The position numbers and the translations under genes were made by a program. The notes below the pieces were generated by a model. The model did not search any database. It was not told the DNA's origin and worked only from the letters and a program-made list of their open reading frames with translations. Positions 14,331 to 22,544 of a stretch of DNA of 64,000 nucleotides are shown in pieces. The DNA comes from Stylophora pistillata (Eukaryota): the NCBI RefSeq assembly GCF_002571385.2, contig NW_019218633.1, forward strand, positions 1 through 64,000, written 5' to 3'. Each line of letters begins with the position of its first letter. Positions within the stretch are counted from its first letter, which is position 1.

Positions 14331-16489
14331 CGTGACAATTCTGTCACGTTCTGTTAGATGACCAAAGTTCAAAAGAATGAAACTGGTCATACATTACATC
14401 CTGCACAAACCATTCTTAAACTAGTTGTTCTAATTCACCAATTATGTCTTCCATGCTGGGTCTCGCCTCAGGATCTTGTTGAATACATCGACGAATGAGA
14501 CCGCGAAGGGCGCGGTCTGTCACCATGGCGACCTGCTGGTCACGCCTGTCAGGATCTGGCAGTTCTCGGTTGCAAATCTCACAAAGAAGAACTCCGAAAC
14601 TATAGACATCAACCTTGAAACAAAAATACAGACAAGAAAAGTAAAATTAAAAAAAAACAACAACAACAACTACAGCAATTTACAGCAGTGCTACAATTAA
14701 TTACTTTCCTTTGAGGGACACTTCCGGCATTGCTGATCCTGAGCTTCGTCCTATGGTCGAGGTACTTTACGTAATCTAAACCGCTGAAAATAGGTTCAAT
14801 TTCTATCTGGGACGTTTACATGTTTGTTTTTTCAACCACTCATGACAACAGTCTACAACATCTTAGCAAAGGTCCCAATGAAAAGGCTACGGGACAACTT
14901 AACTGATCTCAATACCAAATTTGTGCCAGACTTACCTTTACAGTTTGTCTTTTAGTGTGGGCTTCAGGTGCACTGTAAATCATAGCACCAGGACCAACTG
15001 TCATGGTCTGCTGCATAACGTTAGCAGTTCCATAATCTGAGAGTTTGCCTCGCCATCGGTCAGCTTGTCGCCATAGCAACACATTAGCACTGCTGATGTC
15101 GCGGTGAATTATGGGAGAAGGCTCATTTAAATGAAGGTAGTTTAATGCAAGAGCCACATCCAGAGTTATAACAGACCCTTCAATTGAAGAAAGAGATTGT
15201 TGCTCTAACACGACTCGTAAACTCGATTCCATGAGCTCTGAGACAAACAAAGGATTTCCTTCATCATTTGTTGCTCCAATGAACTGAAGCAAACAAAGAT
15301 GGCGGCATCGTGAAGCGATGTTCATTTCTCGCTCAAACAGTCTCCTGTTGTGAGGGGACAAAATCATCTCGTGGATTTGGTTGACGGCTACGGCACAGCC
15401 ACGATACTTTCCTTCAAAAACACTCCCCCAGGCTCCTCCCCCAAGGCACTTATCTGTTACGTGAGTTTGATCGCGTGAAACGACCCAGTCAGGTAACTGT
15501 TGGTGTGGATTTTCATTTATCACCAACTGAGTTGTTGAAAGAGATATCTAGTTCATTTACTTCTTGATCTTTTACCCTCAACAGTCTCTCCAAAGCAGTA
15601 ACCCGATTACGCAAATTATCAGCTTCCTGATCTCTGTGTTGTAATTACCCTTGGACGTGTGCAAGCTGTTGTGACATCTCCCTCAACTGTCTCTCTGCGT
15701 ATCTCTCTTGTTGTTCTTTTTCCCCCAGAAGGTTTGCTTTTTCCTCTTCTTTTTCCTGTAGCTGTGCTTGAAAGCGTGTCCGCTGCTGGCTTAGTTCTTC
15801 ATTTTTGTCTCTCAGTTGTTGTTCTGTTGGTATTAACCGCCTCGGTAACACAATGTTATCTTCTGTTGTTGGTGCTCTTCTTGGCAAAGAGGAATTCTCT
15901 TGCAGTAAGTAAGACTGTGAATTTCCAGTTTGCTGTAGCTGAAGCTCTATAACGCAAAATTAAGCGTTTCAGGTTGTAAAATGTGCTGTATTGTTAAAAA
16001 TTATAATGTAAGAAAAAAAAATGCAAGTAATAAATAAGTAATATTAAATCCCTCAGATAGTGTTCTATTGTCAACAATAATTTATTCTGGTTTGTGACTT
16101 ATTACAGGTAATTCTCATTCCATTTTATCATCATATTAAGGCAACAATTCGCGCAAAATACTAACTTCTTCCTTGGCGTAAAAGCCGTCCTCGGGAACAA
16201 TGGCCCGAGGTCGTGGCAGTTCGGACCGAGCACAGCGAGGTTTGTATAAAAAAAGAGAGAGGGTCGATATTCTGCAGTATCGCTAAAGCAAGCAAAGTTA
16301 ATCAGTAGTTCATCATATGGCACACGGATTGGTCTTGTTTATTTTGAATTTGCCAGCTCCTACAACTCAAAATACACGACCTAAAAACGTTTCCGTGGAA
16401 ACGGTCCGTAAGGCGAAATGCCGACCAACTAAGAAGCAATCAGGACGCTCGTATTTACCTAAGGATTACTGAACCATATAATAAGCGAC

Positions 16490-16710
16490 TGAAAGGGGGT
16501 AAGTTACTTAAGAAAATATCAGTGGTGCTGCGTCGGTGGCAGAGTATAACTAAACAAACTGAGTTGATAATATCAATTGGTCACCGGAGGGAGTTTCTAA
16601 GCTGACATTTCGAGCGTTGGCCCTTCCTCACGGCGAATCATTCACTCGAAACCGTAGCTTCTAAACTCTTTGCGGCGGCCAATTTACATGCATTATCAAC
16701 CCAGTTCATG
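16490..16710. mobile_element. Penelope-like terminal-repeat fragments, head to head
   Basis: agctgacatttcgagcgttggcccttc (16600-16626) is the reverse complement of the gaagggctaacgctcgaaacgtcag motif at 56210 and 32513. Confidence 0.55.
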
Positions 16711-19430
16711 TATTAATTAAGCCGTTTCATTACAGCATGCAACAGCGGAAAAATATGAACGAAAAGTGAAGCTACAAAATGGCCGCATTGCAATTTTTGA
16801 CTTTTTAACTTTATCTTAGGCTTTACTTTTTAAGCAACAAACTACGCATAAGATTTCTTTGTTGCCACAAAGAATACTTTCATAGTTCTTTGTGTTGCTT
16901 TCGTTGTCATATGTGATCAGAAGCAGTTACGTGAGTCTAATACGACCGATATAACTGAGTAAAATTGTTATAGTTAAGATTAACCATGAAATTTCATTAT
17001 AATTTCCGGCAACGTAAGTAAATACCCCAAGAGGGTTATTCGACTGATCGGTACCTTCAGCGCTGTCTACAAATTTGCCATTGTGATGATTTTGCATGCG
17101 ATAAAAATAATCGGGCGACATGACTCTGGTTTCGGGCGAGATGACTTTCGGGTGACTTGGCCGTAAATCATAGCGGGGCTCCCACGCTCTGCCCCATATC
17201 CATGGAATATGGTCAACCTCTTTTCGTTTGGTTGTCACGTGACTGACCGAGCGTTCGTTCGTACGTACGTACGTACGTACGTGTCTTCGGATTGCACGGG
17301 TAGGGTAGGGGAGACTATGAAAACGAAGGGAGGGGTATCTCAGGCTAGTCTTGGCAAATGCACATCTTTTATGTTATCATTAATAGTGAGAACTTGGGAG
17401 CTCCGCTTTTTGGCTTGGCTAAATCTATATATTATGGTACACACTCCTTATTCGATGGTTTTAAGTGAGGAATGAGCACAATGTTCACTCATATTTTATT
17501 ATAACCATCTCATTGTTATCCCACTATTATTTCATTCTCCAGTTGTTTTGCTTCACAGGTGTTTTCGAAATGCATTTTACTAAAATATCTGATCGGTTTC
17601 TTTTCTTTTTTCTTTTTTAAAGGTTGTAGACGAAAGTCTATTTTTATGGCTACTGCCTCTCAAGTTTGATCCGATGTTTTCCAGTTCTATTTACTTTTTC
17701 TTTTCTTTTTTTTTTTTTTCCAGAGTTTGTGATTTCTGGATTATAGTCACTAACACATGATGTTGTTAGTTCTACTAGTTGCCACAGGCAGTCTTTGACT
17801 GTCTACTTTCTTAATATCCCTTTAACTCATAACTACAGAAATAACACAATAAGTAGGAGGAAATAAGAGAGCCCATAGTCTTGTAATAGGAGGAAGTGAT
17901 AAATGTAAAGTCATGTATATGGAGTGAATTGCATACAGTTGATGCAATTGCATTTCCATTTCTATAAAAAATATACTCAAAAACATTGATAATACTACAG
18001 TATCACATATGTACCTGTAATTTTCGTGCAAACTGGAGGTCGCATAGCAAACACTTCACAAAGAATTTGAAGCAGATCTAAAAGATTAGATTTGGACTGA
18101 AAGGATTAAAAAAAGAAAAGGGAATGAGAAACTTATGGCTTTGATAGTACAAGCTGTAACATTATAATTAGATAGAGTATAATAATCTCCGGGTATCTTT
18201 ATTGTGACCCTGTAGAAATTGTACTTAACTGTATTGAAAGAGTGTACTACACTCTACTACATGTACAGTAACTACTTTAATCCAATTGTTTACAAAAGAT
18301 AACAGAATTATGAAGTTGTTGAACTCAGTTGTTGAACTCAGTTGTTGGTTAAGAAGCAACTGAAGTCCAACAAGTTTTCAATAAAATTTTTGGCTCGTAC
18401 TTAAGGAATACCCCATATCTCAATTATAATTGATATTCTGATGTTTTTATGTCTACAATTAAATGAGTCTCCTTAGACACAATATGATTTTGAATTTTCA
18501 CTTCAATATCTGGTGCTCTTTTCTATTTCTTTCCCTGCTTTCAACATTTACAGTCATTCCAGGGTAACAAGCTAAAACAGAAAAATATAGTTTTTCAACA
18601 CATACTTCAAGATGCCATGTATGAAGACAGGGATGGTAAACATTTCCATTAGTATCCACAAGTGGAGACGGAGTGATTTCCATTGTATCAGTAGGTGTGA
18701 CAATCACTAATGGTGGAACATAAGGGTGTCTTTTTTGCAACCAGAGTTGAATTGGGATGTTGTATTTTATACCTAAAATAACAAGGAATTTACATCAAGG
18801 AATCTGATGACTGTGTGCAGACAAAGAAGATATTAAAATCTCATCTTAATTCTTGAGACCTAATTAAGTCAGCTGGCTATAGAAGCAGCATTTGAGGAAT
18901 AAAAGGTAGGCCTGTAGTTAACTCATTTCCTTATATCTTCCTTGTACATTCATCACATTTACATGAATCCAATTCCCTGCAAAAGTGTATGGTGCTGTGT
19001 TGATTGATGTACGAATTTCATGCTAGGGAAATTGCACTGTTTATAGAGAAGGCAAGTTTCTAAAGAAAACTGTCAGTGGTTCTACATCATTGGGGTATCA
19101 GTTAAGAATTGGCCTCCACAAAGAGTTTCTGAAGATGCAGATGTTTTGATCATTAGCCTCTTTACCAGAGTGATAACTAAGGGCTATTAATGCTTGAAAT
19201 GTCAGCTTTAAAAACTGTAATTACTGTGGCTGATTTACGTTATGATTTAGGATCATACACCACATTACACTGTGTATAAACTGATTGATATTTTATTAAT
19301 AATCTGTAGATCTCACCTCTGATTAGAACTGGAATTGTTCCCTCTAGAGAAAACAATTCAACTTCTCTTCCATCATTGTATACTGCAGGTTAAATAAAGT
19401 ACTGTATGAATAAACTGATTGCCTTTGTGT

Positions 19431-21545: not shown

Positions 21546-21703
21546 TACAATGACTTACAAATTCCTTAAATAGATTTATATAGGGCGTGATGACACATAT
21601 AAACAAACACAGTAATTAATATATATATTAACTACCAGTGGTAACTGAAAATAAAGACTTCATCTGCAATAAAAGTGCTCGATGGTAAGACCAGAGCAGT
21701 GAA

Positions 21704-21817
21704 TAAGGATGAGTTTCTGGAATCGGACTAGTTCAAAAATATTTAATTGCTTAACATTTATAATTGCTTTAACATTTAATGTTTTTGAACTGGTCCGACT
21801 CTAGAAACTCATCTTTA
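21704..21817. repeat. Inverted repeat (MITE-like hairpin) next to (TA)n
   Basis: gatgagtttctggaatcggactagttcaaaaa pairs with tttttgaactggtccgactctagaaactcatc. Confidence 0.8.
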
Positions 21818-22544
21818 TATATATATATATATATATATATGGCAGACAGTTGTAACAGTACTGTCAACCTTAAGTAAGCAACTAGTCTTCGAGTTCCCAG
21901 CTTATTCAAAACATGACAGTCATATCAAGAATCAATGTACCAATTGTCAATCCTTTTGAGATAACATCATCCAAAATGGTCCTAGATAAATTTAGTTAAA
22001 CTAGTGTGATATTTTATCTCTGAATGAAAATATTAAAAATTCCACCAAACTGTTGCTTCTAACAGGTCTCAATTGAATTAGATTGAGATCAATTTTGAAT
22101 TAATTCTGTTTCTAAATAAAAACATGTTTTGTCTACATTTCAGGGTTATTTTGCAAAGTAACAGTTTTTCTCTCATTAGGTATCAATTTAAAATCAAATG
22201 AATTGACTTATGTTAATTAAACTGAAACGAAATCTGTTTTACTTAAAAATATATGAAAGCTTTAATTTGTTTGACTGCATTCTCACTTATAGAACTAATA
22301 GGAATTTTTGTCAACTGCATATTAATTATACAATTATCTCACCAAACATTCCTTCCAATGGCTGTAGACTGTTAAATTGTTTAAGAGCCTTTACAACATC
22401 AGTTTGACAGAGCTCAGGAAAATCATACTGAGAAAACAAGTTATCCATATATCATTAGCAGTTCTACAGAGCTCTGTAACTGATATGTTCACCCTTACAT
22501 AAATGCAACACATAGGTTACAGATATAGGTTACATAGGTGAGAC

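What the first reader, a model, noticed from the sequence alone, without database searches (positions are those of the whole stretch)
14416..22427. TSG101-type UEV domain spliced to a coiled-coil kinase: candidate integrated-decoy sensor
Seen: four small exons, three of them not translated in the ORF track, rebuild a nearly complete UEV domain and join in phase to a coiled-coil plus TKL kinase exon. Established: TSG101/Vps23 UEV binds ubiquitin and P(T/S)AP motifs, including viral late domains, and is normally followed by Pro-rich, coiled-coil and steadiness-box regions, not a kinase. From memory the 85- and 66-nt exons match TSG101 exons 2-3, indicating genomic exon shuffling rather than retrocopying. 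VYNDG (ubiquitin tongue), YNIP and the M95 equivalent are kept; Y63 and F142 equivalents are changed. Inference: an ESCRT-mimicking sensor kinase, possibly antiviral.
Basis: partly seen in the sequence, partly recalled or inferred. Interest (0 to 1): 0.8.

Follow-up and report, generated by a model that had tools for sequence, protein, structure and literature searches.

The report
Coral UEV-kinase fusion gene, now broken
The coral Stylophora pistillata makes a spliced RNA joining a copy of the ubiquitin- and virus-motif-binding head of TSG101 to a coiled-coil kinase, but all three gene versions sampled carry their own early stop codon before the kinase, so the predicted fusion protein is not made in them.

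Summary
Four UEV exons on the minus strand splice to each other and to the coiled-coil/kinase exon at the predicted 18015/15946 junction. RNA contigs from three runs in two studies show this.

The genome is Stylophora pistillata. The UEV exons keep the intron positions and phases of the coral's own TSG101, so they came from a genomic duplication. They splice into the native phase-1 acceptor of one member of a coral coiled-coil TKL kinase family with at least 79 loci.

The reference has an in-frame TAA, a 2-nt deletion and the catalytic Lys changed to Asn. Two other haplotypes seen in RNA lack some of these lesions, but each has its own TAA upstream of the kinase.

Both halves evolved under purifying selection for a long time (dN/dS 0.26 and 0.12-0.16 at dS about 1).

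Best reading: a once-intact, lineage-restricted UEV-kinase gene that is now decaying and at most yields a 209-267 aa UEV plus short coiled-coil protein. No UEV-kinase relative was found elsewhere. The decoy-sensor idea is untested.

The parts
22343..22448 (-). UEV exon A. It has an in-frame ATG at 22448 and a phase-1 donor after 22343. The homologous TSG101 exon 2 is 85 nt, which corresponds to 22343-22427 after the acceptor-like ttttctcag.
   Evidence: Sequence. 50% identity to the first UEV exon of the coral's TSG101. TSG101 exon 1 and its 85-nt exon 2. Not tested by RNA.
19317..19382 (-). UEV exon B, 66 nt. It encodes the YNDG 'tongue' and the Y63-equivalent Ile.
   Evidence: AG/GT borders. 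RNA joint to exon C. Aligns to TSG101 residues 44-62.
18606..18772 (-). UEV exon C, 167 nt. It encodes YNIP, the M95 equivalent, and F88 changed to Ile.
   Evidence: Pfam UEV 42 bits and 62 bits in the genome search. TSG101 residues 66-118 at E 8e-12. RNA joints on both sides.
18015..18096 (-). UEV exon D, 82 nt, ending the UEV domain (F142 is Cys, S143 is Thr). Its donor at 18015 is new: in TSG101 the same exon runs on into the Pro-rich linker.
   Evidence: RNA joint 18015/15946 in X1, X2 and X11.
14936..15946 (-). Large exon encoding the linker, the coiled coil and the kinase N-terminal two thirds. It is the native phase-1 exon of the coral coiled-coil TKL kinase family.
   Evidence: Pfam Pkinase at 3e-22. 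60-76% identity to at least 79 paralogous loci. Acceptor phase compared with L008/P0001. RNA contigs.
15645..15647 (-). In-frame TAA of the reference haplotype, where paralogues and the other haplotypes have CAA (Gln).
   Evidence: RNA shows A>G at 15647 in X1, X2 and X11, and in 2 of 4 raw reads of X24.
15546..15550 (-). Site of a 2-nt deletion that causes a frameshift. It is shared by the reference and X1/X2. X11 carries the two extra bases and reads ELEISL..., colinear with the paralogues.
   Evidence: table 4.
15380..15382 (-). Catalytic VAVK lysine codon. It reads AAC (Asn) in the reference and AAA (Lys) in X1, X2, X11 and in 7 of 12 X24 reads.
15564..15566 (-). Codon that is TAA in the X1/X2 haplotype and CAA in the reference.
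   Evidence: 15566 G>A in X1 and X2.
15738..15740 (-). Codon that is TAA in the X11 haplotype and AAA in the reference. It ends the 165-aa database protein P0122.
14416..14613 (-). Last coding exon, encoding the kinase C-lobe, with the TAA stop at 14418-14416.
   Evidence: Sequence. Pfam match to the kinase C-terminus. RNA joint 14936/14613 skipping 322 nt.

Best explanation
This is a lineage-restricted chimeric gene of Stylophora pistillata. The promoter-proximal UEV exons of an old TSG101 duplicate, cut off inside the fourth UEV exon, gained a new phase-1 donor. They now splice into the native phase-1 acceptor of one member of the large coral coiled-coil TKL kinase family, replacing that kinase's own 5' exons. 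The fusion mRNA is made and spliced as predicted.

Both halves were held by purifying selection for most of their history, so the fusion, or at least each half, was once functional. Today the reading frame is interrupted between the UEV and the kinase in every haplotype sampled, each time by a different nonsense mutation. Two of the three also carry a frameshift, and one has lost the catalytic lysine.

The kinase is therefore no longer translated as part of this protein. The gene is a transcribed, decaying (possibly polymorphic) pseudogene. Its longest remaining ORF encodes only the UEV domain plus 69-127 residues of the large exon: the residue spanning the D/E junction, then linker and coiled coil.

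Shown: the exons, the splicing, the lesions, the family context and the selection ratios. Inferred: that the fusion was ever translated whole, and the timing of its decay.
For: - **Splice joints.** All four joints appear in RNA contigs of X1 and X2 (study P1) and X11 (study P6). The depth across the D/E joint (73, 60, 14) equals that of exon E, so this is the main isoform.
- **Reference lesions.** These are the TAA at 15647-15645, the 2-nt deletion and K to N, each judged against about 25 paralogues. They are real alleles and not assembly errors: X24 raw reads split 2/4 and 5/12, and X1/X2 contigs cross the deletion without a gap.
- **X1/X2 haplotype.** It has Gln and Lys at those sites, but a TAA at 15566-15564 plus the same frameshift.
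- **X11 haplotype.** The Logan contig L041 is in frame through to VAVKQIHEM but has a TAA at 15740-15738.
- **Degeneration on both lineages.** Of 15 polarisable reference/X11 differences, 9 are derived on the reference side and 5 on the X11 side, several of them at conserved positions.
- **Kinase conservation.** The window kinase departs from the family at 5 of 80 columns that are at least 90% conserved.
- **Long-term constraint.** Kinase dN/dS is 0.12-0.16 at dS about 1 against paralogues, the same as among intact paralogues. For the UEV, dN/dS is 0.25-0.28 against Stylophora and Pocillopora TSG101. dS is about 1.0-1.2 for those pairs and 0.30 between the two TSG101 orthologues.
- **Origin by exon shuffling.** Intron positions and phases are shared with TSG101, and the donor after exon D is new. 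The native acceptor is phase 1.
Against: - Only three haplotypes were seen, through assembled contigs that drop rare variants, so a lesion-free allele could segregate.
- The long-term low dN/dS and the near-intact X11 allele (one nonsense change from a full 543-codon frame) show that decay is recent. Function in some populations is therefore not excluded.
- The UEV exons differ by only 2 of 318 nt between the reference and X11, against 25 of 590 nt in the large exon. This could mean the UEV-only product is still under selection rather than the whole gene being dead.
- A transcript with a stop far upstream of the last exon junction would be expected to be degraded, yet it is readily assembled in polyA libraries.
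Confidence: 0.6

Rival explanations
1. The selected product is the truncated protein: a free TSG101-type UEV domain with a short coiled coil and no ESCRT-I core. It would compete with TSG101 for ubiquitin or P(T/S)AP ligands, acting as a sponge or dominant-negative, with the kinase region serving as 3' UTR.
For: - All three stops fall after the UEV domain, and no lesion lies in the UEV exons B-D, the only ones seen in more than one haplotype.
- The UEV exons are far less divergent between haplotypes (2/318) than the large exon (25/590).
- UEV dN/dS is about 0.26 over a long branch.
- From established knowledge, over-expressed TSG101 UEV fragments block PTAP-dependent virus budding in human cells.
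Against: - The two UEV differences between haplotypes are both non-synonymous (C/Y and R/Q).
- F88 and F142 equivalents, which contact ubiquitin and PTAP in human TSG101, are changed to Ile and Cys, whereas the coral's own TSG101 keeps aromatic residues there.
- The coiled-coil region is rich in Gln, Lys and Glu codons that are one step from a stop, so chance alone can place stops there.
- The X11 contig starts exon B after a 25-nt leader with an in-frame stop and no exon A.
- The long-term constraint on the kinase shows it was needed until recently.
Confidence: 0.2
2. One reading: a working UEV-coiled-coil-kinase that senses ubiquitin or late-domain-like ligands through an integrated TSG101 decoy and signals through the kinase. 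The broken copies would be null alleles of a polymorphic immune-type gene.
For: - The fusion transcript is real.
- X11 is one substitution from a full frame, and most haplotypes keep the catalytic Lys, HRD, DYG and APE motifs.
- The kinase family shows birth-and-death evolution in tandem arrays, with about a quarter of matches carrying stops.
- Other members carry foreign N-terminal domains: GT4 lies 1.5-2 kb upstream on the same strand at C482 and C153.
- Both halves show long-term constraint.
Against: - Three of three sampled haplotypes are null, each by an independent lesion.
- No UEV+kinase protein was found among the closest UEV relatives or in the literature search.
- Overall UEV dN/dS is about 0.26, with no sign of diversifying selection.
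- No ligand, virus or phenotype is known.
Confidence: 0.12
3. The fusion never worked. A rearrangement placed a truncated UEV gene upstream of a kinase family member, and the chimeric RNA is an accidental read-through that began to decay at once.
For: - The donor after exon D is new and lies inside what is a longer exon in TSG101.
- The gene sits alone, outside the kinase arrays.
- No orthologue with this architecture was found.
Against: - The UEV copy split from TSG101 about three times earlier than Stylophora split from Pocillopora (dS about 1 against 0.30), yet kept dN/dS about 0.26. No other 3' partner (Vps23 core or RING) is left in the window. A truncated UEV gene would have needed some downstream exons all that time.
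- The lesions in the large exon are few and haplotype-specific, which indicates recent decay.
Confidence: 0.08

Closest known systems
TSG101 / Vps23 (ESCRT-I subunit), UEV domain PF05743
   Same: The UEV domain is complete, with the same exon-intron layout as the coral's own TSG101 at G000:C27. The tongue motif VYNDG, YNIP, the M95 equivalent and the Tyr that replaces the E2 catalytic Cys are all kept.
   Different: There is no Pro-rich linker, stalk or Vps23 core; only C27 has the core. Identity to the coral's TSG101 is 50-71% per exon. F88 is Ile and F142 is Cys. The domain is followed by a kinase-family exon instead.
Coral coiled-coil TKL kinases annotated 'drkD' or 'STY8-like' (for example the S. 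pistillata protein P0001)
   Same: The kinase is 60-76% identical, has the same long Gln/Glu/Lys-rich coiled coil before it, the same phase-1 acceptor of the large exon, and the same intron after QTVK.
   Different: The N-terminal exons are replaced by UEV exons. The frame is broken. In the reference, the catalytic Lys and an invariant Pro are lost.
UEV(-UEV)-RING proteins (Oculina patagonica 'TSG101-like', Branchiostoma, Saccoglossus; G000:C502 in this genome)
   Same: This is another case of a TSG101-type UEV joined to a different effector domain, with the same UEV exon layout.
   Different: The effector is a RING E3 domain, not a kinase. That family is conserved across phyla, whereas the UEV-kinase join was found only here.
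Plant integrated-domain immune receptors (NLR-ID and tandem kinase proteins with integrated domains)
   Same: The concept is similar: a copy of a host protein targeted by pathogens is fused to a signalling module in a fast-evolving, tandemly expanded family (from established knowledge; a paper on tandem kinase proteins surfaced).
   Different: There is no evidence of ligand sensing, no NLR partner and no diversifying selection here, and the frame is broken. The resemblance is by analogy only.

Membership tests
UEV domain (Pfam PF05743) | Profile match above the curated cut-off | tested here: met
   Exon C alone scores 42 bits against a cut-off of 27, and 62 bits in the genome search. The natural spliced ORF P0122 scores 98 bits over profile positions 33-121.
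UEV domain (Pfam PF05743) | E2 fold without the catalytic cysteine (Tyr at the human Y110 position) | tested here: met
   The alignment to TSG101 chains puts NGNVY on NGKIY. The nearby Cys of the reference, at the Y113 position, is Tyr in the X11 haplotype.
UEV domain (Pfam PF05743) | P(T/S)AP groove and ubiquitin contacts as in human TSG101 | tested here: inconclusive
   Kept: V43, N45, D46, Y68, N69, I70, P71 and M95. Changed: F44Y, Y63I (also Ile in the coral's TSG101), F88I, F142C and S143T. The roles of these residues are taken from established structural work. No binding test was done.
TSG101/Vps23 orthologue (ESCRT-I) | Vps23 core (steadiness box, PF09454) and stalk after the UEV | tested here: not met
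   PF09454 is found only at G000:C27. No remnant of the TSG101 C-terminus is present in the window.
Protein kinase, TKL group | Kinase-domain profile match, with closest solved relatives in the TKL group | tested here: met
   Pkinase at 3.4e-22 and PK_Tyr_Ser-Thr at 3.6e-18. For a close paralogue, the closest solved structures are CTR1, TNNI3K, BRAF, IRAK4 and TAK1.
Protein kinase, TKL group | Catalytic residues (VAIK Lys, HRD, DFG, APE) | tested here: inconclusive
   HRD, DYG and APE are present. The Lys is Asn in the reference, but Lys in X1, X2, X11 and in 7 of 12 X24 reads.
Coral coiled-coil TKL kinase family | Shared sequence, coiled-coil region and exon structure | tested here: met
   60-76% identity to at least 79 loci. 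The region is colinear with the paralogues once the 2-nt gap is allowed for. The phase-1 acceptor and the intron after QTVK are the same.
Translated UEV-kinase fusion protein | One open frame from the UEV through the kinase | tested here: not met
   The reference has a TAA, a frameshift and K to N. X1/X2 has a TAA at 15566-15564 and the frameshift. X11 has a TAA at 15740-15738.
Integrated-decoy sensor (by analogy with plant NLR-ID and tandem kinase proteins) | The decoy binds a pathogen ligand and this activates the signalling module | not testable with these tools
   No ligand or pathogen is known. Only the architecture can be read from sequence.
Integrated-decoy sensor (by analogy with plant NLR-ID and tandem kinase proteins) | Relatives with the same join, or diversifying selection on the decoy surface | tested here: not met
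   None of the 10 hits scanned from the 150 best exon-C matches has UEV+kinase; these covered all but one of the hits longer than 500 aa. Further searches gave nothing. UEV dN/dS is about 0.26 overall. A site-wise test was not possible.

The most novel reading that the evidence does not exclude
An intact UEV-coiled-coil-TKL kinase existed for a long time in the Stylophora lineage and may still segregate as a lesion-free allele. It would couple recognition of ubiquitin or P(T/S)AP-type ligands, such as viral late domains, to kinase signalling, as an animal counterpart of plant integrated-domain kinases. Alternatively, the truncated UEV-only product now acts as a late-domain sponge.
Probability: 0.15. 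Interest if true: 0.8.

Novelty: new variant of a known kind. Interest (0 to 1): 0.45.

Why it matters
A UEV domain joined to a protein kinase did not turn up in the protein or literature searches made here, so the architecture may be new.

This pattern of module swapping invites comparison with plant integrated-domain receptors.

The case also shows a gene caught while dying: three haplotypes carry three different stops. This makes it a usable system for asking whether such fusions are kept, lost or trimmed in natural coral populations.

As it stands, the fusion protein is not encoded in any sampled haplotype, so the functional claim remains a hypothesis.

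Tried and rejected
- **Intron to bypass the breaks.** I looked for an intron that would remove the TAA and the frameshift. No donor/acceptor pair restores the kinase frame without deleting the glycine loop, and RNA shows no joint inside 14936-15946.
- **Assembly error.** Rejected, because X24 raw reads and X1/X2 contigs carry the reference states.
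- **Gene conversion.** I considered conversion from paralogues as the cause of the high reference/X11 divergence in the large exon. The paralogues are only 69-76% identical at nucleotide level here, so a conversion tract would bring many more changes. The excess divergence stays unexplained.
- **Searches for relatives.**
  - HMMER search of 1.84 billion representatives with exon C: only P0122, the X11 allele, is closer than coral TSG101.
  - Word search with P0122: found only itself.
  - Scan of JGI metagenome contigs: nothing.
  - Word search with a paralogue: 4,670 kinases, and none of the 120 listed has a UEV.
  - These searches have blind spots: the length window of the word search, and the 50% clustering of the representatives.
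- **25-nt leader of L041.** Not found in the window with up to 3 mismatches, nor in the genome with up to 2.
- **Upstream exon.** A crude search for an exon homologous to TSG101 exon 1 upstream of 22448 found nothing.
- **Exon A in solved structures.** It gave no match on its own.
- **Joined model.** Exons were searched one by one by reference, and the naturally spliced contig L041 and its protein P0122 stood in for the joined form. No structure prediction of the full UEV was made for that reason.

Full report
**What is there.**
The gene lies on the minus strand. Reading the sequence and checking borders by script gives four small exons with canonical splice sites:
- A: 22343-22448, with an in-frame ATG at 22448
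- B: 19317-19382, 66 nt
- C: 18606-18772, 167 nt
- D: 18015-18096, 82 nt

After these comes a 1011-nt exon (14936-15946) and a last exon (14416-14613, with the stop at 14418-14416).

Exon C alone passes the Pfam UEV threshold (42 bits against a cut-off of 27). Exons B, C and D align in order to human TSG101 residues 44-62, 66-118 and 121-143. The large exon and the last exon carry a protein kinase domain (Pkinase 3.4e-22). The closest solved structures to a near paralogue are CTR1, TNNI3K, BRAF, IRAK4 and TAK1, so the kinase belongs to the TKL group.

**RNA evidence.**
A search with a paralogue returned a 100% identical NCBI protein of Stylophora pistillata, so the genome is that coral. I laid four RNA runs on 14400-20399. 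Contigs of X1 and X2 (one study) and X11 (another study) show the joints 19317/18772, 18606/18096, 18015/15946 and 14936/14613, all with GT..AG ends on the minus strand.

Its depth (73, 60 and 14) equals that of the large exon in each run, so the UEV-to-kinase splice is the main form and not a rare read-through. Raw stranded reads of X24 fit minus-strand transcription.

Exon A lay outside the laid stretch and remains untested.

**The large exon is not an open frame.**
The genome holds at least 79 matches to this kinase at 30-76% identity, many in tandem arrays on contigs C266, C284, C978, C444 and C1355. About a quarter of the matches contain stops. Intact members read as a long Gln/Glu/Lys-rich coiled coil running straight into the kinase.

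Against them, the window has three lesions:
- a TAA at 15647-15645, where paralogues have Gln
- a 2-nt deletion near 15546-15550 that shifts the frame before the kinase
- AAC (Asn) in place of the invariant VAVK lysine, at 15382-15380

**Three haplotypes, three different stops.**
The variant tables, translated, show the following.
- X1, X2 and X11 carry CAA (Gln) at 15647 and AAA (Lys) at 15380.
- X24 raw reads are split at both sites (2 of 4 and 7 of 12). The reference states are therefore real alleles, not assembly errors.
- X1 and X2 have the same 2-nt deletion as the reference, plus a TAA at 15566-15564.
- X11 has the two missing bases and reads NELEISLPTTQLVLNEKPHQQLPDWVISRD...VAVKQIHEM, colinear with the paralogues. 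It also has a TAA at 15740-15738.

The X11 contig was recovered independently as Logan contig L041. Its 165-aa protein P0122 ends at that stop.

From the ATG at 22448, the longest frames are 240 aa (reference), 267 aa (X1/X2) and 209 aa (X11). Each consists of the UEV domain plus part of the linker and coiled coil. With the two bases restored and no stops, the frame would be 544 codons (1632 nt). This shows that the parts fit into one reading frame, although in no sampled haplotype is that frame open.

**Origin.**
The genome has three UEV loci.
- **G000:C27** is the true TSG101. It has the UEV, a Pro-rich linker and the Vps23 core.
- **G000:C502** has the same four UEV exons followed by a RING finger.
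- **The third** is the window.

All three share the intron positions and phases. In C27, a short exon 1 (MDAHIRNRLGK) precedes an 85-nt exon 2 that starts after ttttctcag. The window keeps the same acceptor-like sequence before 22427.

In C27, the fourth UEV exon continues into the Pro-rich linker. In the window it ends at a new donor, right after the UEV domain. The acceptor at 15946 corresponds to the native phase-1 acceptor of the family's large exon, as seen in the annotated paralogue P0001.

No remnant of a TSG101 C-terminus or of a RING lies in the window.

**Selection.**
For the kinase exon, dN/dS against the nearest paralogues is 0.12-0.16 at dS about 1. This is the same as among intact paralogues.

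For the UEV exons, counts were summed exon by exon:

| Comparison | dS | dN/dS |
|---|---|---|
| Window vs Stylophora TSG101 | 0.97 | 0.28 |
| Window vs Pocillopora TSG101 | 1.19 | 0.25 |
| Stylophora vs Pocillopora TSG101 | 0.30 | 0.27 |

. The UEV copy is therefore much older than the split of these genera, and it was under constraint for most of that time.

The lesions are few, differ between haplotypes, and include changes at conserved kinase positions on both the reference and X11 lineages: 9 and 5 of 15 polarisable sites. This fits recent relaxation of constraint.

One oddity stays unexplained. The reference and X11 differ at 25 of 590 nt in the large exon, but at only 2 of 318 nt in the UEV exons. 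X11 intron contigs differ at about 1%. Paralogues are too distant (69-76% identical) for simple gene conversion to explain this.

**The UEV surface.**
Kept: VYNDG, YNIP, the M95 equivalent and the Tyr at the former E2 active site.

Changed: Y63 is Ile, but the coral's own TSG101 also has Ile there, so this is not specific to the copy. Specific to this copy are F88 to Ile and F142 to Cys (the coral's TSG101 has Phe and Tyr there), and S143 to Thr. Whether it still binds ubiquitin or P(T/S)AP cannot be told from sequence.

**Relatives and context.**
HMMER with exon C against 1.84 billion representatives found nothing closer than coral TSG101 (65-67% identity), except P0122 itself. Ten hits were scanned against Pfam, covering all but one of those longer than 500 aa. 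They were multi-UEV, UEV-RING or TSG101 proteins, and none had a kinase. Further searches gave nothing, and a literature search found no UEV-kinase fusion.

These searches have blind spots (length windows and clustering), so absence is not proven.

Sampled paralogues carry only a coiled coil and a kinase. However, two family members at C482 and C153 have a GT4 glycosyltransferase domain 1.5-2 kb upstream on the same strand. This agrees with earlier notes of this scan on GT4- and CYLD-like N-terminal joins. Swapping of N-terminal modules therefore recurs in this family.

**Verdict.**
The best reading is a once-intact, lineage-restricted UEV-kinase gene that is now a transcribed, decaying pseudogene (confidence 0.6).

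The rivals are:
- a selected UEV-only product (0.2)
- a still-functional polymorphic sensor kinase (0.12)
- a fusion that never worked (0.08)

**Method note.**
The joined spliced model was not sent to any tool. Exons were searched singly by reference, and the natural contig L041 and its protein P0122 served in place of the joined form.

Noticed in passing
G000:C502, about 167500-177750 (L035:1546-1803, L035:4498-4557, L035:9850-9999, L037:910-972, L037:1679-1729): A third TSG101-type UEV gene has the same four-exon layout, followed about 3 kb downstream on the same strand by a C3HC4 RING finger ORF. UEV(-UEV)-RING proteins also exist in Oculina patagonica, Branchiostoma and Saccoglossus. I know of no described function for this family.
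   Followed up: partly
G000:C482:35327-38081 and G000:C153:37914-40480: GT4 glycosyltransferase (PF00534) matches lie 1.5-2 kb upstream, on the same strand, of kinases of the same coiled-coil TKL family. The genome holds at least 93 GT4 matches in all.
   Followed up: partly
L041:1-25: In the X11 transcript contig, exon B is preceded by 25 nt that are not exon A. They contain an in-frame stop and match nothing in the window (up to 3 mismatches) or in the genome (up to 2 mismatches). This may be an alternative or unassembled first exon, or a spliced leader.
   Followed up: partly
window 14936-15946 compared with 18015-19382: Between the reference and X11, the large exon differs at 4.2% of bases. 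The UEV exons differ at 0.6% and X11 intron contigs at about 1%. This remains unexplained, and paralogues are too distant for simple gene conversion.
   Followed up: partly
window 17200-17599, 19400-19599, 19800-19999, 20200-20399; also 20601-20783 and 20840-20995: Intronic stretches show contig depths in the thousands in RNA runs, with many loose ends, so they are likely copies of abundant transposable elements. There are also two near-identical tandem ORF-bearing copies.
   Followed up: no
P0121 (1258 aa), P0125 (1112 aa, Cyprideis torosa), P0179 (805 aa, Sycon ciliatum): These are proteins with two to four tandem UEV domains and long tails without Pfam matches. They come from an ostracod, a sponge and an unnamed source.
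   Followed up: no
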